This document shows, one piece after another, positions 35,531-43,236 of a DNA stretch of 64,000 nt. Position 1 is the stretch's first letter. Every line of letters begins with the position of its first letter. This DNA comes from Piromyces finnis finn (Eukaryota; Fungi; Neocallimastigomycota). The DNA lies in NCBI GenBank assembly GCA_002104945.1, contig MCFH01000049.1:357780-421779 (forward strand). The letters are read 5' to 3'. The position numbers and the translations under genes are program-made. The notes beneath the pieces are model-generated. The model was not told the DNA's origin and searched no databases. It saw nothing but the letters and a program-made list of their open reading frames with translations.

Positions 35531-38500
35531 CATTATTAATATACATTCCAATATATACCACATCATAAAACAATACTCTTAATCTTAACCAATTTAATTA
35601 TCATTCCCCCTTTTTTTTTGTAATATTTTCTTATTATTTTGAAGCAGTACTTGTTATAATATTTTATTTTTTTATTTTATTTTTTTTTTTTAAAATTATA
35701 TATTTTACCCTATTATTTCTATTATTCTTTTAATTCATCTTTTTTTCATCATTTGTTCTTTTTTATATACAGTGTATACATTATATATATTGTTTTCTAT
35801 ATATTTATAAAGATTTAAAATTATATTAATATATTTACTATTATTTTTTGGATGATAATGGTAATCTACAGATAGATTGTTATTCATGCAATGAATGATT
35901 TTTTAATAATGAATCACCACACATATATAATAATGCTATAGAAAAGAACAAAAAAATATATATGTATATATTTTATTTTTTAATGAGCTCATTAAAAAAA
36001 AGCAAGCAAGCAAACAAACAAACCAAAAAAACAAAAAACAAAAAACAAAAAAAAAAAAAAAAAACAATCAAAAAAAAAAAAAAATATTGTAACATTTACA
36101 AAAGTAAAGAAAGAAAATATTTTATTATTATTATTATTTTTTATTTTTTATTTTTTAAAATGATAATAATAATATTTAATTTTTTTTTTTTTTTTTTTTT
36201 ATAAAGTAAATAATGATAATCGTATATTAAATAAGATCAGAATAATTTTTCATTGTATTTCCCATATCTATAAATATTTATATCTTTTTATAGACTTTAA
36301 AAAAGAATTTTTTTTTTTATTAATATATATTTTAATACATTAAATTAACAAAATTTTATTTTTTCAAGTCAATTCAATTCCTATAAAATATATATACATA
36401 CCTGCAACATCTACTAAAAAAAAAAAAAAAAAAATCAATGAATTATCATCAAATAATAATGAATTCGGTAAATGATAGATATATGATAACAATCATAAAA
36501 AAAAAAAAAATCAATTATAATAAATACTACTTTTACTACTACTACAACAACTACTACCAATAATTGATTTTGCAATAAAGTATATATAAATTTTAAGCGA
36601 TAAAGTATCAATAGAATAAAAATAAAAATAAAATGAAATAAATGAAATAAGTAAATAAATAAAATAAAATAAAAAGAAATAATTATCCTACAAAATAATA
36701 AATCTATAATTAATATAATAAATATATAATATAATTAATATAATATATATAAATAAAAAAAAATAAAAATAAAAATAAAAATAAAATAAAATACTACTAC
36801 TACTACTACTACTACTTCTTCTAATAATAATGTTAAAAGAATCATCATTTTTCTAATAATTCCTTTTTTATTTTATTATTATTATAATTTTTTTCTTATC
36901 ATGGAAGAAGCAATTAAAAACAAAAATTATTTTATTGTTGAAAAAATAGAAACATAAATTTAACCATACTGGAATTTTTTTTTTTTTTTTTACTTTATAT
37001 TTCATGTGATGATGATGGATATAAAAACAAAACAAAACAGGATAAATTTTAAATAGTAATGAACACTATAATAATCCTTAAATTTAAAAAATACTTGGAA
37101 AAAACTTTTTAATGGCAAGATTTTTTTTTTTTAGAATAGTCTTTTTTTCACTTTTGACTTACTTTAATATATATATATATATTTTATTGATAGTATATAA
37201 CTATTTATTTTTTTTCCACCATTATATAGGTATAGTTAATTTTCATATAGAAGGGCTATATAAATGAATTTTATTTTTGGAATTTTAAAAAATAATAAGA
37301 ATAAAAATGTTTTTTTTTTTTTAATTTTTTCATTTTCGATATACATCAAACATAAATTTAAGAATAATATATTACTGTAGACGAGGATTTTATTTAAATT
37401 AATAATAGGATTATTATGATTTACTATATACTTGCTCTCTTTCTTGTAAAGTACTTGTCTGATAATTATATAAAAGAAAATCAAGGTGTAGCTAACGTTA
37501 GTCATAACGACTTTACAAGAATTTGGGTCAATTTTTTTTAATTAAATATTTGCACCCATATTACTTAAAAATTCAGCTAGAGATAATCCAATATTTATTA
37601 TAGCATATATCAATGAAATTTGTTTTTTTTTCTTTTTAAAGAGTTTTCTATATTAATAAAATTAAGAATATTTTTTTTTATTTTATTTTCTTAGAGTCAG
37701 ATTTATATGTTAATGAATGATTATTTTATTATAACATAATATTTATCTTATCGATATTGCTATAGACTATGGTATCATCAATAATTGAATTTTTATTAGT
37801 ATTCCGATCTTTGAAAGGAAAATTGTTTTCACGTTTCACATTTTATTTTACATATATATATATATAAAATAAAGAAACATAAAGCATAATTTTTTTCTAT
37901 TCAAGCTCATTTACCATTTTTTGTTTCAACAAAAATATAGAAATTTTTGCTTTAAATCCAATAATTCTTATATCAATACCGTTTAATCAATTCAAATTTT
38001 GTATTGTACTAACTTCTTAACCACCACCATCCATTGTAATTTCGTTAGATAAAAAAAATTAAAATTACGAAGATCTCGTTATAGGTGTTATAGGTTGGTA
38101 ATTTAGTAATTTAGTAGTAAACATTTTTTATAAAAAACAACAACATAATAATTAAAAATTTCTATAAATTAAAAAGAAAAATAGATTCTTATGTAACATT
38201 GTGGAATAACAGTATTCATTTTAATAGAAAAAAATATAGTCACTGAATTCATTTTTAAAAATAATAATAATAATAATAAAATAGCCTACAAAAAAAAAAG
38301 TAATTTGATTTATTGAAAAAATGAAAGAAAAATAATTATAAATATTAAAAATAGAATTCTAGAATTGTTAACACCATTTTTTTAAAAATGAAGATAGTTT
38401 GACACTTTAATATTAAAAATAAAAATAAATACAAAAAAAAAAAAGAATTTTTTCCTTAAATTATAATAAATATTTTTATTTATTTATCAATGGATCGTAA

Positions 38501-38619
38501 ATAAATATAATTAAAGTTTTTATCAAAATTGCTCTTTTTCGTTTAGAATCTAATAGATATTAATTGGATTTTATAAATATAAGTATATTATTTTAATTTT
38601 TAATAAATATTATCATATC

Positions 38620-40440
38620 TTAAAATAAATAAATAATAGATAATAAAATAGCAAAAATAAAAGAATAGGTAATTTTAATAGAAGTCATAGAGCCACTCTT
38701 TTCAGCTAAGGTATGAATGGCATCACAATCTTTCTTTTTGTAGTAATTAGTGAATTCTTCCCAGTCTTTAACTTCAGAACTACCAGTAAGCTTTAAAAGT
38801 TCAACTAAACTGAGGAAACGCTTGTTACATTCAGTAATTTTACAATCATCTGTTAATTCATGGTAGAATTCATGTTCGTGGTCTTCATCAGAATGGCTGT
38901 GGTCATGATCATCTTTACTTTCATCATGAGAGTGAGTCGTACCACTAAGATCAGCAATAATATCTTCAACAGAGGAAGATTCTGGGAAGAAAGTTGGCCA
39001 ATTGTTTTCTAAATCAATGTCATCCCAACTAGTACTACTGGAACGAAGATGGAAATGAGCTGCTTTAGCTGGAGCAATCATATGGTCATTGAATTCAACG
39101 TAAATTGGAGCACCAGAATTCTTATCCTTGGCAACAAATTGGTAAAGGACACCTCTTGTACCACCAGACCAGTCAACAATGAATGGACCCTTGTGTTCAT
39201 ATTCAGAACTAGCAATTTTACCATCGTCGTATACAAAAGTAATTCTATTATCTTTAATAATAACTCTGCTAATGTTACTCTTATAACCCTTTTCATAGTA
39301 ATCCTTGTATTCAGCAGCAGTCTTATCACCTTTATCTTTAGCCTTAGCTTCGAAAGCTGGATCTAATTGACCAGAAAGAACTAATTGATATGGTGATTTC
39401 CAATCCCCTTCCCAATCAGAGAGTTGTCTATCCTTAACTTCTTCATCCTTGAAAGTGGAAACGCTATTACCATGATCGTGGTCATGATCATCTTTACTTT
39501 CATCATGAGAGTGAGTCGTACCACTAAGATCAGCAATAATATCTTCAACAGAGGAAGATTCTGGGAAGAAAGTTGGCCAATTGTTTTCTAAATCAATGTC
39601 ATCCCAACTAGTACTACTGGAACGAAGATGGAAATGAGCTGCTTTAGCTGGAGCAATCATATGGTCATTGAATTCAACGTAAATTGGAGCACCAGAATTC
39701 TTATCCTTGGCAACAAATTGGTAAAGGACACCTCTTGTACCACCAGACCAGTCAACAATGAATGGACCCTTGTGTTCATATTCAGAACTAGCAATTTTAC
39801 CATCGTCGTATACAAAAGTAATTCTATTATCTTTAATAATAACTCTGCTAATGTTACTCTTATAACCCTTTTCATAGTAATCCTTGTATTCAGCAGCAGT
39901 TTTATCACCTTTATCTTTAGCCTTAGCTTCGAAAGCTGGATCTAATTGACCAGAAAGAACTAATTGATATGGTGATTTCCAATCCCCTTCCCAATCAGAG
40001 AGTTGTCTATCCTTAACTTCTTCATCCTTGAAAGTGGAAACACTATTACCATGATCGTGATTATGAACTTCTTCAACACCAAAGTCTTCTAATAAATGAC
40101 CGGAAATTGGACAAATACTTCCATTACTGTCAGTAGCACAGTACTTTAAGTAAGCGATTCTCATATTTAAAATAGTTAATGCATCTTTCTTTTCTTCATC
40201 ATTTTTAATATCACATTCACTAGAAGTGTTAATGGCATCAGCAATGAAGGAATTACAATCCTTACTTTTAAATTTGTTACATAAGGTTTGAATATCATTA
40301 CCATTTTCTGAAGTAAGTAATTTTGAATCAATTGATGAAATACAAGTATTATATTTTTCTAATTCACTTGTACAATTAGATGAATGAGCCAAAACAGCAT
40401 TGATGGCTATTAATAAACCACTTAATAATTTAAATTTCAT
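38620..40440 (-). CDS. Secreted, probably GPI-anchored protein with two tandem ZinT (YodA/AdcA C-terminal) zinc-binding domains and His-rich linkers
   Basis: Signal peptide MKFKLLSGLLIAINAVLA (ATG at 40440). Two copies of FKDEEVKDRQLSDWEGDWKS...YKDYYEKGY...FNDHMIAPAKAAHFH...NWPTFFP. C-terminal SGS plus hydrophobic tail. Intronless. Confidence 0.88.
   Translation of the reverse strand: MKFKLLSGLLIAINAVLAHSSNCTSELEKYNTCISSIDSKLLTSENGNDIQTLCNKFKSKDCNSFIADAINTSSECDIKNDEEKKDALTILNMRIAYLKYCATDSNGSICPISGHLLEDFGVEEVHNHDHGNSVSTFKDEEVKDRQLSDWEGDWKSPYQLVLSGQLDPAFEAKAKDKGDKTAAEYKDYYEKGYKSNISRVIIKDNRITFVYDDGKIASSEYEHKGPFIVDWSGGTRGVLYQFVAKDKNSGAPIYVEFNDHMIAPAKAAHFHLRSSSTSWDDIDLENNWPTFFPESSSVEDIIADLSGTTHSHDESKDDHDHDHGNSVSTFKDEEVKDRQLSDWEGDWKSPYQLVLSGQLDPAFEAKAKDKGDKTAAEYKDYYEKGYKSNISRVIIKDNRITFVYDDGKIASSEYEHKGPFIVDWSGGTRGVLYQFVAKDKNSGAPIYVEFNDHMIAPAKAAHFHLRSSSTSWDDIDLENNWPTFFPESSSVEDIIADLSGTTHSHDESKDDHDHSHSDEDHEHEFYHELTDDCKITECNKRFLSLVELLKLTGSSEVKDWEEFTNYYKKKDCDAIHTLAEKSGSMTSIKITYSFIFAILLSIIYLF
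38899..40059. repeat. 579-bp tandem duplication encoding the ZinT domains
   Basis: Offset 579 bp. Only two substitutions seen (39322/39901 and 39462/40041), both synonymous. Confidence 0.93.
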
Positions 40441-41345
40441 TTTTTTTTTTTTTAAAATAAATAAAATTATTAAATAAAGAATGTATGATATTGAAAAAAA
40501 AGTTTCCTTTTTTTCCCTTTTTATACTTTTTTTTTTTTTTTGTAGATAGACACACATAACATAATATAATCTCTTTTTTTAAATTTCATTAATTACAAAA
40601 ACGCAATTCTTTCGTATCCATTGTAAATTTTAATTTAATTAGGATGGTCTCATTTGTGTAAAACTTTAAATTTACAATTCTTCATCATTCAAATAGTAAA
40701 ATTGCAAATTTAAAGTTTCTTATGGTTACACACATTATTTATATTTAATAAAGTTTAAGTAACAAAAAAATACAGAAAAATAAAAATACAGTTGTGAAAG
40801 ACAGCAGTGGATGACTCCATTAAAACAATCTAAAATACTATTTTTATATTTTAGTATAATTAATAATGTATAAAAGTGAAGCTTTGATCTCTTAGAGATA
40901 CACCTTTTTTTCTAAGTAATTTGTACTATTTTTTTTTTTTTTTTTAAAATTTATCTTTCTTTATTTCATCTTAATTAGGTTTAGCAAAAAATATTAAATA
41001 GCATCATTAATTATATTGATTGTATTAGATACAAGAACAGAAAAACTTACTAGAATACCTCTATCGTATCTGTAAAATATCAATACTCTAAAGTATTCTA
41101 CCACTAACCCTATAAAAGGAAGGATGAAGAATAAAAAAAAAAGATTGTTGTATCTGAATATAAAATAATGTGTATTTTTATTATAAAAATATATGAAATT
41201 ATTTTTTTTTATTGTAAAGAAAACACTATTGTTTTATTATAATTTATTAACATAATAATTTAAAAAAAACACTTTAATAAAATAATTATATAAAAAAAAA
41301 CTATTCATACAATGAAATAACCTTTTTTTATTTTTAAAAATTATC

Positions 41346-41488
41346 AGAATATGTGAAACTATGTATTGAAATGTATCGAAATGGTATGAAACGTATTTGC
41401 ATGTATTGCATTTGATTAGATGTTTATACTACAATGTAAATGTATAAATACATATAGTTTGAATAGAATGTAATGTTAAGTAGTTCTT
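41346..41488. repeat. Dispersed ~145-bp repeat, copy 1 (copy 2 at 58118-58268)
   Basis: Shared AGAATATGTGAAAC...AAACGTATTTG...ACAATGTAAATGTATAAATACA...AAGTAGTTCTT with many substitutions. Confidence 0.7.
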
Positions 41489-42402
41489 AGAATATAATAA
41501 TAACTAGAATAATAATAGCAGTCGATATGAAACCAATATATCTAGTTAAACATACTAGTCTTTATTAATAATAATTTTCACTATTTAAAGTATTGCAATA
41601 ATTCCTGTTGAAAATTTTATAATAAAATAATTTGTAGTTCCAATAGATATTATATGTATGTATTTATAACACTTTATTCGTTAAACATTGTCATATTTTA
41701 TTATATTCTTAAATATATTAACCAATATTCTATTCATTTTTGTATTCCTTATTAAATATTTTGTTATTTTATTGTTAAGATTAATTATTTTACTAATAGT
41801 TTATTAAAACATAAAAGTAAAAAAAGTTATATTAACCTATTGTTTTTATATATTCTAAGCATTAAGTATATACAGTTGATAATAATTAAAAATTTTAAAC
41901 TATAAAACTATTACTAAAAATACAATAAAATAGATTAATTAGTTTATAAAGGTGAATTGAATAGTAAAAGAAAGAGATCTTTAAAGAACAATTTTCACCT
42001 AATATAATATTAAATAAAACTAAAATTAAAGGTTTTCAAAATAAAAAAAAAAAATCTATATCACAACCATAAACGTTCTTTTATTCATTTATGTCATTAT
42101 AAACGTACGTAACTAATGGATTGATATATGTTTCTTTTATGTTGTCATTTAATATTAGTATATTTATAATTTATTATATTAGGTGAAAAATATTTTTTTA
42201 TTATAATTAATTCTTCTTTCTAAATAATTTCTTATTTTGTTTTATTATTAATTATTAGAATCTGATATAACTCGGTTCAATACAATTTTATTTTTAAGGG
42301 TTTTTGTGATTAAATACTAAATTTATTAATAATATATTTTTAATACAAGATGTGGTTTTAATAATTCATATTTTTCATAATCTATACTAAATATTTAAGA
42401 AT

Positions 42403-42632
42403 TGTTAAACATTAATAATTTAACTTAAATCTAGAAATATGTAGAATAGAATAGAATTATGTATTACTAATATATTTAGTCATAGAATATTCTCATGATA
42501 AATAATACGCCACAATCCTTAGTATAAATAGAGAATAAATTTATGAACTATTTATGTACTTTGTAATTACCTTTTTATTAATAATATTAATAAATAAAGT
42601 TTATATTAAAAACAATATTATAAATTTTCTCA
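42403..42632 (+). repeat. Copia 5' LTR
   Basis: Starts TGTTAAAC, ends TTCTCA, matches 53887-54116. Confidence 0.96.
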
Positions 42633-42646
42633 GATTAAGAGTCTCA
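42633..42646 (+). promoter_or_regulatory. Copia primer-binding site complementary to the tRNA-Lys(CUU) anticodon arm (half-tRNA type)
   Basis: GATTAAGAGTCTCA directly after the LTR. Its reverse complement TGAGACTCTTAATC contains GACT-CTT-AATC, the recalled eukaryotic tRNA-Lys(CUU) anticodon stem-loop. Confidence 0.7.
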
Positions 42647-43236
42647 AAACTTTCTTAATACCATGGATTACAATTTATTCAAAGGCCCTTCTCTCAATGG
42701 ATCCAACTTTAACGCCTGGTACAACCGTACCAAGAATACTTTGACTGCATTTCAACTTAGTCAATATATTGAATCTGACGTCATTAATAATTTAAAGAAA
42801 AATAATACTACTCCGGATGTTTTAAACAATGCCAGAATCGAAAATGCCAAAGCCCTCGGTATCATTTATGGAAGTATAGATGACAACATTCATAACTACC
42901 TAAGAGGACTTAATACAGCTTATGAAGTCATGAACAAGTTAACTAAACTGTTTAAACAAGACGATGCTGTAAACCTTGAAGCCTGGTTAAATAAGATTAA
43001 CAATATGAAGGCTAGAAATGAAAAAGAAATTATAAAAACTCTGAGCAATATGATGGAACTTTTTAGATTAATGGAATCAAATAATTCAAAACTTACCGAA
43101 ACAGAAAAAATGCGGTACATGTATAACTCATTACCCAGCAATATTAGAAATATTATAATCCTATCAAACACTTACAATACTTCATCAGAATTATTCAACT
43201 CTATCAAAGAAAGAATTAAAACTATGAACCATGCCG

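What the first reader, a model, noticed from the sequence alone, without database searches (positions are those of the whole stretch)
38620..40440. Bacterial ZinT zinc-capture domains grafted into a fungal GPI-anchored Cys-rich surface protein
ZinT/AdcA-C is a bacterial periplasmic or lipoprotein Zn chaperone that feeds ZnuABC/AdcABC. Here two complete domains keep the metal-site motif DHMIAPAKAAHFH and alternate with His/Asp-rich linkers (HNHDHG, HSHDESKDDHDHDHG, HDHSHSDEDHEHEFYH). They sit between two Cys-rich halves (C..YCATDSNGSICP and DCKITECNKRF..YYKKKDC) that look like one fungal secreted domain split by the insertion. The protein has a signal peptide, a GPI-like tail and no introns. 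Inference: a horizontally acquired, cell-surface-tethered multivalent zinc scavenger, functionally analogous to but unrelated to the Candida Pra1 zincophore. It would need a eukaryotic partner transporter, since fungi lack ZnuABC. I cannot confirm whether it has been described.
Basis: partly seen in the sequence, partly recalled or inferred. Interest (0 to 1): 0.8.

Follow-up and report, generated by a model that had tools for sequence, protein, structure and literature searches.

The report
Bacterial zinc-binding domains in gut-fungus surface protein
An anaerobic gut fungus (Piromyces finnis) carries a surface-protein gene in which two copies of a bacterial zinc-capturing domain, taken from rumen Ruminococcus bacteria, sit inside a loop of a fungus-specific ten-cysteine domain, probably as a cell-surface zinc scavenger that nobody has tested or described in detail.

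Summary
Window 38620-40440 (minus strand) is one uninterrupted 606-aa ORF: signal peptide, Cys-rich N part, two complete ZinT domains (Pfam E 1e-119) with His-rich linkers, Cys-rich C part and a GPI-type tail.

The genome is Piromyces finnis. GenBank already holds this gene as a 411-aa "YodA-domain-containing protein". That model removes one repeat as a 585-nt in-frame intron, which public read contigs do not support.

The two ZinT units are a 579-nt tandem repeat with two synonymous differences, so the duplication is recent.

Trees place the gut-fungal ZinT domains inside Ruminococcus-type proteins, where ZinT is itself inserted in the zinc-binding protein ZnuA. A sister fungal family keeps two ZinT types that each group with the matching bacterial type.

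A profile search found about 40 gut-fungal proteins in which the N and C Cys-rich parts are contiguous. They form one compact all-helical 10-Cys domain with no Pfam family and no fold match. The "split scaffold" idea therefore holds.

Zinc scavenging at the cell surface is inferred, not shown. Prior literature found: ZinT listed in one supplementary table as a domain unique to gut fungi. The scan separately noted the 10-Cys domain elsewhere in this genome.

The parts
38620..40440 (-). Whole CDS: 606 codons plus the stop codon at 38620-38622, with no interruption
   Evidence: ORF list and translation. The start at MKF is shared by all orthologues.
40381..40440 (-). Signal peptide, aa 1-20
   Evidence: Sequence read; h-region hydropathy 2.2; conserved in orthologues and in scaffold paralogues.
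40069..40380 (-). N part of the gut-fungal 10-Cys scaffold domain (aa 21-124, 7 conserved Cys, all-helical)
   Evidence: Alignment A3. The profile finds 62 relatives. pLDDT is about 90 in the model.
39487..40068 (-). ZinT unit 1 with its leading His-rich linker (aa 125-318). His triad at H260, H269 and H271.
38908..39486 (-). ZinT unit 2 with its leading His-rich linker (aa 319-511). His triad at H453, H462 and H464.
38860..38907 (-). Trailing His/Asp/Glu-rich linker (aa 512-527)
   Evidence: The equivalent His-rich flank follows ZinT in the Ruminococcus proteins.
38698..38859 (-). C part of the 10-Cys scaffold domain (aa 528-581, 3 conserved Cys, DCKxxxCN and YKKKxC motifs)
   Evidence: Alignment A4. 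Contiguous with the N part in paralogues.
38623..38697 (-). GPI-type C-terminal signal (aa 582-606): small residues SGS, a polar spacer and a 15-17-residue hydrophobic end
   Evidence: The same kind of tail is present in most scaffold paralogues.
38899..40059 (.). Tandem direct DNA repeat, two units of 579 nt (about 38899-39478 and 39478-40059) with two synonymous differences inside
   Evidence: The junction-specific contig 39433-39507 is present in four runs, and the repeat contig has about 2.2 times the depth of the flanks in the DNA run.
38913..39497 (-). Stretch removed as a GT..AG 'intron' in the public 411-aa gene model. It is in frame, coding-like and equals one repeat unit plus 6 nt. 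Probably an annotation artefact.
   Evidence: Deleting exactly this stretch reproduces P0003 residue for residue. No joint and no 6-nt gap appear in any contig.

Best explanation
This is a Piromyces finnis gene for a secreted, probably GPI-anchored surface protein.

Its frame is a ten-cysteine, all-helical domain found only in anaerobic gut fungi (AGF). A variable loop of that domain carries a cassette of bacterial origin: ZinT zinc-binding domains flanked by His/Asp/Glu-rich linkers.

The cassette came by horizontal transfer from a Ruminococcus-like rumen bacterium. In that bacterium the same cassette sits in the His-rich-loop position of the zinc ABC-transporter binding protein ZnuA. The transfer predates the split of the sequenced AGF genera.

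In P. finnis the single ZinT unit was recently duplicated in tandem, giving two nearly identical domains.

Inferred mechanism:
- The His-rich linkers collect Zn(II) at low affinity.
- Each ZinT His triad holds it at high affinity at the cell surface.
- The metal is then passed to a fungal importer, most likely of the ZIP family, since the ZnuA part was not retained.
- Copy number (1 to 4 among AGF) sets capture capacity in the zinc-competitive gut.

Shown here: architecture, domain identity, fold, bacterial ancestry, scaffold continuity in paralogues, recent duplication, and presence in contigs of probable RNA runs.

Inferred: metal binding, metal specificity, GPI anchoring and the transporter partner.
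For: - ZinT identity: Pfam E 1e-119 in two stretches; 40% identity to solved ZinT/AdcA with the DH-x8-HxH site aligned; model-to-crystal TM 0.88.
- The His triad is kept in every AGF ZinT domain except P0141.
- Bacterial ancestry: the best non-fungal hits are Ruminococcus ZnuA+ZinT proteins at 55-62% identity, against at most 45% for stand-alone ZinT.
- Careful tree: 17 AGF d2-type domains form one clade (96/98) inside the bacterial clade of ZnuA-inserted ZinT (100/99). Five AGF d1-type domains are sister (100/96) to d1 of Ruminococcus flavefaciens double-ZinT proteins.
- An AU test rejects a single AGF clade, p 6e-10.
- Donor architecture: the Pfam ZnuA match is split around ZinT at profile positions about 80-86, and His-rich flanks lie on both sides.
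- Eukaryotic context and amelioration.
- Scaffold: (pTM 0.79); named members are all AGF.
- Recent duplication; WIN_d1 and WIN_d2 are sisters at 100/99.
- Reads: the junction contig is present in one DNA run and three probable RNA runs. The probable RNA runs cover only 38461-40424, whereas the DNA run also covers the flanks.
Against: - No experiment or expression data under zinc limitation exists.
- No yeast-type zinc-response element lies upstream, although the AGF element is unknown.
- No ZIP transporter gene was seen among the long ORFs of the window.
- ZinT proteins also bind Cd, Ni and Co in vitro (titles of PDB entries 1oee and 4tnn), so specificity is open.
- No GPI predictor was available, and the tail could be a transmembrane anchor.
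- The AGF d2-type clade is not resolved as sister to the d2 of the same R. flavefaciens proteins. One transfer of a d1-d2 cassette versus two transfers is therefore undecided.
- The run kinds X2-X4 are only guessed to be RNA.
Confidence: 0.6

Rival explanations
1. The same protein and the same origin, but its role is metal buffering, detoxification or withholding (Cd, Ni, Co or excess Zn, or starving competing bacteria of zinc) rather than feeding a fungal importer.
For: ZinT/YodA crystallises with Cd and Ni as well as Zn (PDB titles). The protein has 27 His in 606 residues and acid-rich linkers. No transporter partner was identified.
Against: In the bacterial donors the cassette is built into a zinc-uptake binding protein. 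In bacteria the family is known as part of zinc uptake (established knowledge of ZinT/ZnuA and AdcA).
Confidence: 0.2
2. The ZinT domains are now only structural spacers in a cell-wall or adhesion protein. The function lies in the 10-Cys scaffold, and metal binding is irrelevant.
For: The scaffold family is large and mostly lacks ZinT. One AGF member (P0141) has lost the His-triad motif and sits on a very long branch.
Against: The His triad and the His-rich linkers are conserved in all other AGF copies across four genera, in both d1-type and d2-type domains. This indicates selection on the metal site.
Confidence: 0.08
3. The second ZinT copy is not part of the mature protein. Either the 585-nt stretch is a real intron, as in the GenBank 411-aa model, or the duplication is an assembly artefact.
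For: The public model P0003 equals the ORF minus window 38913-39497, which starts with GT and ends with AG. Short-read contigs collapse the repeat.
Against: - The 'intron' is in frame, coding-like and exactly one repeat plus 6 nt, with both splice sites inside the repeated linker.
- A junction-specific contig, 39433-39507, occurs in four runs from four studies, including the three probable RNA runs.
- No contig shows the joint or the 6-nt gap that splicing would create.
- The repeat contig has about 2.2 times the flank depth in the DNA run.
- P0001 independently has two ZinT units, and other AGF proteins have three or four.
Confidence: 0.07
4. The locus is bacterial contamination or a chimeric contig.
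For: The nearest non-fungal relatives are rumen bacteria.
Against: - The gene lies between LINE, copia and gypsy elements, next to a CBM1 gene, in flanks of 17% GC.
- Its GC3 of 0.23 matches host genes.
- It is fused in frame to an AGF-only scaffold with a eukaryotic signal peptide and a GPI-type tail.
- Orthologues exist in four AGF genera.
Confidence: 0.01

Closest known systems
Ruminococcus/Oscillospiraceae 'ZinT/AdcA family metal-binding proteins' (e.g. P0055 R. albus 549 aa, P0021 R. flavefaciens 716 aa)
   Same: These are the closest ZinT sequences, at 55-62% identity. They share the same His triad, have His-rich linkers on both sides of ZinT, and carry one to three ZinT units as an internal insert. 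d1 and d2 types are present, as in the second AGF family.
   Different: The host domain there is ZnuA (PF01297), a lipoprotein of an ABC importer. Here the host domain is a eukaryotic 10-Cys scaffold, no ZnuA part is retained, and the anchor is GPI-type.
Stand-alone periplasmic ZinT/YodA of E. coli and Salmonella (PDB 1oee, 4arh, 5aq6)
   Same: Same lipocalin-like fold (TM 0.88, rmsd 1.4-1.6 A) and the same DH-x8-HxH site, at about 40% identity.
   Different: Those are single soluble periplasmic domains that work with ZnuABC. The fungal protein is multi-domain, secreted by a eukaryote and tethered.
Streptococcus pneumoniae AdcA (PDB 7jj9, 7jja)
   Same: A ZinT domain covalently joined to another extracytoplasmic protein and anchored to the membrane by a lipid. 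About 40% identity.
   Different: In AdcA the ZinT is C-terminal to ZnuA, not inserted. The NCBIfam AdcA model scores only 309 bits against a cut-off of 700 here, because the ZnuA part is absent.
Candida albicans Pra1 / Aspergillus fumigatus Aspf2 zincophores with Zrt1/ZrfC (from general knowledge)
   Same: A proposed functional analogy only: an extracellular fungal zinc-capturing protein that would serve a ZIP importer.
   Different: No sequence or fold relation. Pra1 is mainly secreted and re-captured. No adjacent transporter gene was seen here, whereas PRA1 and ZRT1 are neighbours.
Fungal CFEM GPI-anchored proteins (Rbt5/Pga7 haem relay)
   Same: Cys-rich, helical, GPI-anchored fungal surface domains used for nutrient-metal capture. 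UniRef labels one scaffold paralogue (N. californiae ORY49208.1) as CFEM-containing.
   Different: No Pfam CFEM match at E 0.01 in the paralogues or at E 10 in the scaffold parts. The family has 10 Cys rather than 8, and no CFEM structure appears among the top fold matches.

Membership tests
ZinT/YodA (Pfam PF09223) | Profile match above the curated cut-off over the full domain | tested here: met
   397 bits against a cut-off of 27, in two stretches that each cover profile positions 8-178 of 181.
ZinT/YodA (Pfam PF09223) | Lipocalin-like (calycin) fold | tested here: met
   The AF2 model has pLDDT above 95 over aa 140-300. Foldseek gives TM 0.87-0.90 and rmsd 1.3-1.6 A to 4arh, 1oee and 7jja.
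ZinT/YodA (Pfam PF09223) | Three-histidine metal site (DH-x8-HxH) plus a His-rich N-terminal segment | tested here: met
   H260/H269/H271 and H453/H462/H464 align with the SDH...HFH site of 4arh. His-rich linkers precede each unit.
ZinT/YodA (Pfam PF09223) | High-affinity Zn(II) binding and zinc-limitation control | not testable with these tools
   Needs biochemistry and expression experiments.
AdcA-type ZnuA-ZinT fusion (NCBIfam NF033605) | ZnuA solute-binding domain joined to ZinT | tested here: not met
   309 bits against a cut-off of 700, covering only profile positions 316-512. No PF01297 match. The flanking parts are all-helical and Cys-rich.
GPI-anchored fungal surface protein | N-terminal signal peptide | tested here: met
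   By inspection and hydropathy; conserved in the family. No dedicated predictor was available.
GPI-anchored fungal surface protein | C-terminal signal: small omega-region residues, a polar spacer and a terminal hydrophobic stretch with no cytoplasmic tail | tested here: inconclusive
   KSGS, then a 7-residue spacer, then 15-17 hydrophobic residues at the very end. The same pattern is in most paralogues. No GPI predictor or experiment was available.
Anaerobic-gut-fungal 10-Cys scaffold domain (unnamed, no Pfam) | Ten conserved Cys with the CPxSxY, DCKxxxCN and YKxxxC motifs, forming one compact helical domain | tested here: met
   Seven Cys in the N part and three in the C part align with the ten near-invariant Cys of 51 family rows. 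The paralogue model has pTM 0.79.
Horizontally transferred gene in Neocallimastigomycota | Nested inside a bacterial clade with support, and integrated in the eukaryotic genome | tested here: met
   Support values 96/98 within 100/99, and 100/96 for the d1 type. Eukaryotic flanks and host-like GC3.
Horizontally transferred gene in Neocallimastigomycota | Absent from other fungi | tested here: inconclusive
   Searches returned only AGF and bacteria, and only the best 120 hits were listed. Wang et al. 2019 (PMC6712302, Table S1) list ZinT as unique to AGF compared with Chytridiomycota.

The most novel reading that the evidence does not exclude
A 'ZinT plus His-rich linker' cassette behaves as a portable loop-insert module. 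It sits in the His-rich loop of ZnuA in Ruminococcus. It was transferred, probably as a d1-d2 pair, into a surface loop of a gut-fungus-specific GPI-anchored domain. There it founded a eukaryotic zinc-acquisition system unrelated to Pra1-type zincophores, and its capacity is tuned by ongoing tandem duplication (1 to 4 units, with near-identical copies in P. finnis and A. robustus).
Probability: 0.45. Interest if true: 0.7.

Novelty: new variant of a known kind. Interest (0 to 1): 0.6.

Why it matters
If the inferred function is right, this would be a clear case of a eukaryote using ZinT. It would also be a fungal zinc-uptake front end built from a bacterial domain, which shows how anaerobic gut fungi compete for trace metals with the bacteria they took the domain from.

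It is also a clean example of domain-level horizontal transfer. Only the insert of a bacterial protein was kept, and it was placed as an insert in a lineage-specific eukaryotic domain.

Three practical points follow:
- The public gene model of P. finnis lacks one whole domain and should be corrected.
- A sizeable unnamed 10-Cys surface-protein family of gut fungi is defined here by a profile and a confident model.
- The bacterial 'ZinT inside ZnuA' architecture deserves description.

Tried and rejected
1. TRF found no tandem repeat because the 579-nt period exceeds its limit. The repeat was found with the repeat finder and a script.
2. Pfam scans of the N and C scaffold parts of five orthologues at E up to 10 gave only noise.
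3. The word-based protein search with aa 1-140 found nothing. Only the exhaustive profile search found the scaffold family.
4. The Atlas feature search suggested DUF7729 for both halves, at scores 0.84 and 0.76, within the range of chance. Pfam did not support it, so I dropped it.
5. Fold searches with the scaffold model gave no convincing match: Atlas TM at most 0.37 and best PDB Z 5.9, below the noise level for helical proteins.
6. I considered the idea that the fungal flanks are relics of the donor's ZnuA halves and rejected it. There is no PF01297 signal, the flanks are all-helical and Cys-rich, and the same domain exists without ZinT.
7. A yeast-type zinc-response element (ACCNNNAAGGT, one mismatch allowed) is not enriched in the window and is absent upstream of the gene. 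This is uninformative, because the AGF element is unknown.
8. ARAGORN found no tRNA in 36000-43000.
9. Literature searches returned nothing relevant for ZinT or YodA with Neocallimastigomycota or anaerobic fungi, or for ZinT with ZnuA and Ruminococcus. The Murphy et al. HGT preprint does not mention it in the text or the supplement held.
I used the contiguous paralogue instead.
Full report
**What is in the sequence**

On the minus strand, 38620-40557 is a 645-aa ORF. All relatives begin at the internal MKF, so the CDS is 38620-40440, 606 aa. Its order is:
- a signal peptide, aa 1-20;
- a helical part with 7 Cys, aa 21-124;
- a short His-rich linker;
- ZinT unit 1, to aa 318;
- a His/Asp-rich linker and ZinT unit 2, to aa 511;
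- a longer His/Asp/Glu-rich linker;
- a helical part with 3 Cys, aa 528-581;
- a tail of small residues (SGS), a 7-residue spacer and 15-17 hydrophobic residues at the very end.

Pfam ZinT matches at E 1e-119 with two full-length stretches. The NCBIfam ZinT equivalog scores above its cut-off. The AdcA model scores far below its cut-off, because there is no ZnuA part.

**Whose genome, and is the locus sound?**

The window averages about 20% GC. The gene lies between a LINE, a copia element and a gypsy element. The window also holds a protein with a fungal CBM1 module and an NSS transporter.

The word-based protein search returned "YodA-domain-containing protein [Piromyces finnis]" (P0003, 411 aa) at 98% identity. 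A script showed that P0003 is exactly the window ORF with 585 nt (window 38913-39497) taken out. The window is therefore P. finnis.

The gene's GC3 of 0.23 resembles that of neighbouring host ORFs (0.15-0.19), and its flanks are 17% GC. Contamination or chimerism is excluded for practical purposes.

**The tandem repeat and the public gene model**

The two ZinT units are a 579-nt direct repeat. Inside the repeat there are only two differences, and both are synonymous. In the trees the two units are sisters with 100/99 support. The duplication is therefore very recent, or the copies are kept alike by gene conversion.

The public 411-aa model removes one unit as an "intron". That stretch begins GTAAAG and ends GTAAAG, with both sites inside the repeated linker. 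It is in frame and coding-like.

Logan contigs of four runs from four studies were laid on 38300-40800:
- A 75-nt contig specific to the unit-to-unit junction (39433-39507) is present in the DNA run X1 and in X2, X3 and X4. The X2-X4 run kinds are only guessed to be RNA.
- No contig shows a joint, or the 6-nt gap that the proposed splice would create.
- In X1 the collapsed repeat contig has about 2.2 times the depth of the unique flanks.
- X2-X4 cover only 38461-40424, whereas X1 also covers the intergenic flanks. This fits transcripts of an expressed gene.

I conclude that the 606-aa two-domain protein is real and that the 411-aa model is an annotation artefact. Contigs cannot exclude a rare spliced form.

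**ZinT identity**

One unit is about 40% identical to the solved ZinT/YodA of Salmonella and E. coli and to the ZinT domain of S. pneumoniae AdcA. The site DH-x8-HxH aligns with theirs.

An AlphaFold2 model of the one-unit form has pLDDT above 95 across the ZinT part. It superposes on those crystal structures at TM 0.87-0.90 and rmsd 1.3-1.6 A.

The His triad is kept in every gut-fungal ZinT unit examined, except in one divergent protein, P0141.

**Origin**

The best non-fungal hits are Ruminococcus and other Oscillospiraceae "ZinT/AdcA family" proteins, at 55-62% identity over a unit. Stand-alone ZinT proteins reach at most 45%.

In all of those bacterial proteins ZinT lies in the middle of the protein. 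The Pfam ZnuA match is split around it at profile positions about 80-86. From what is known of ZnuA structures, that is where the His-rich loop lies. His/Asp/Glu-rich stretches flank ZinT on both sides, as they do in the fungus. Some bacterial proteins carry two or three units, and their first unit (d1) is a distinct type from the second (d2).

A careful maximum-likelihood tree of 101 domains, rooted on stand-alone ZinT, puts the gut-fungal domains in exactly two places:
- Seventeen d2-type domains, including both window units, form one clade (96/98) inside the bacterial d2/single clade (100/99).
- Five d1-type domains, from a second fungal family (P0005, P0009, P0139 and Anaeromyces robustus ORX88208.1), form a clade (100/99). 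That clade is sister (100/96) to d1 of R. flavefaciens-type double-ZinT proteins.

A tree forcing all fungal domains together is rejected (AU p 6e-10). The caveat is that I named the group after seeing the tree.

The simplest reading has four steps:
1. A d1-d2 cassette was transferred once from a double-ZinT Ruminococcus gene.
2. The gene then duplicated within the fungi.
3. The d1 unit was lost in the window's family.
4. Later tandem duplications followed.

Two separate transfers are not excluded, because the fungal d2 clade is not resolved next to the d2 of the same donors.

Members occur in Piromyces, Neocallimastix, Anaeromyces and Orpinomyces, so the event is old. Host-like GC3 agrees with that.

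**The scaffold**

Pfam and the word-based search found nothing for the Cys-rich parts. I therefore searched a profile of the N part (A3) against 1.84 billion representative proteins, which gave 62 hits.

About 40 of them are proteins of 200-300 aa with these features:
- a signal peptide;
- exactly ten Cys;
- a GPI-type tail;
- the N part followed within about 10-30 residues by the C part (profile A4).

Examples are P0158 (216 aa), Piromyces sp. E2 OUM59113.1 and N. californiae ORY49208.1. Others are arrays of four to six such units, up to 1289 aa. All members that carry a name are gut fungi, including three from P. finnis.

In the family alignment the ten Cys are nearly invariant. The ZinT cassette sits in the variable loop between the CPxSxY helix and the DCKxxxCN motif.

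P0158 folds with pLDDT above 90 over aa 20-185 and pTM 0.79, as one compact all-helical domain. That model has no convincing match in the ESM Atlas (TM at most 0.37) or in the PDB (best Z 5.9).

The domain is an unnamed family specific to gut fungi. An earlier first-stage note of this scan (s1-261020) independently flagged an unnamed 10-cysteine GPI-type domain elsewhere in this genome.

**How it most likely works**

Shown here: the architecture, the ancestry, an intact metal site, the secretory signals, and probable expression.

Inferred from established ZinT, ZnuA and AdcA biology: the linkers and the His triads capture Zn(II) outside the cell.

The ZnuA part and the ABC importer were not taken over. 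The metal must therefore go to a fungal importer, most plausibly a ZIP-family protein. In outcome this resembles the Pra1/Zrt1 and Aspf2/ZrfC systems, but the protein is unrelated to them.

Copy number varies from one to four among gut fungi. Near-identical copies occur in P. finnis and in A. robustus, where d1 and d3 are 98% identical. This suggests ongoing selection for, or at least tolerance of, higher valency.

The rivals are metal buffering or withholding, and a purely structural role. Neither can be excluded without experiments.

**Novelty**

The protein and its orthologues are in GenBank under automatic names: "YodA-domain-containing", "Calycin-like", and JGI's "Zn/Cd-binding protein ZinT".

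ZinT appears among the domains unique to gut fungi in Table S1 of Wang et al. 2019 (PMC6712302), without discussion. The Murphy et al. HGT preprint does not mention it. Four other literature searches found nothing.

The following appear undescribed in the library searched:
- the insert-in-scaffold architecture;
- the donor's insert-in-ZnuA architecture;
- the two-type cassette;
- the recent duplication;
- the faulty gene model;
- the definition of the scaffold family.

I rate it a new variant of a known kind and of moderate-to-good interest. Horizontal transfer into gut fungi is commonplace. A domain-level graft that may have created a new eukaryotic zinc-capture device is not.

Noticed in passing
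window 38913-39497: The GenBank/JGI model of this gene (411 aa, 'YodA-domain-containing protein [Piromyces finnis]') deletes one whole ZinT unit as a 585-nt in-frame GT..AG intron. Contigs from four runs show the unspliced junction and no spliced form.
   Followed up: yes
P0055, P0029, P0021 and about 100 other bacterial hits: In Ruminococcus and other Oscillospiraceae, ZinT (one to three units, with His-rich flanks) is inserted inside ZnuA at Pfam profile positions about 80-86, the His-rich-loop position. It is not C-terminal as in streptococcal AdcA. No paper describing this turned up in the search.
   Followed up: partly
P0133-P0138, P0143-P0145: The gut-fungal 10-Cys scaffold also occurs as arrays of two to six units in proteins up to 1289 aa with GPI-type tails. 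The family has no Pfam model and no fold match.
   Followed up: partly
P0140 = Anaeromyces robustus ORX88208.1: This protein has four ZinT units arranged d1-d2-d1-d2, and the two d1 units are 98% identical. It is an independent recent tandem duplication of a whole d1-d2 pair.
   Followed up: partly
P0141: A gut-fungal family member whose ZinT domain lacks the DH-x8-HxH motif and sits on a very long branch (3.17). It may have lost metal binding or changed function.
   Followed up: no
window 38461-40424, run X2: In run X2 the collapsed repeat contig has about 3.9 times the flank depth and the junction contig about 1.8 times. In the DNA run X1 the figures are 2.2 and 1.2. This could mean more than two units in that culture, but contig depth is a poor measure.
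   Followed up: no
P0195 = N. californiae ORY49208.1: UniRef names this scaffold paralogue 'Extracellular membrane protein CFEM domain-containing protein'. No Pfam CFEM match was found at E 0.01 for its cluster representative P0146, and the Cys count is 10-11 rather than 8.
   Followed up: partly
window 41040-41115, minus strand: A short GC-richer stretch upstream of the gene begins like a tRNA 5' half (GGGTTAGTGGTAGAATAC). ARAGORN calls no tRNA there, so it may be a tRNA-derived fragment or a SINE piece.
   Followed up: partly
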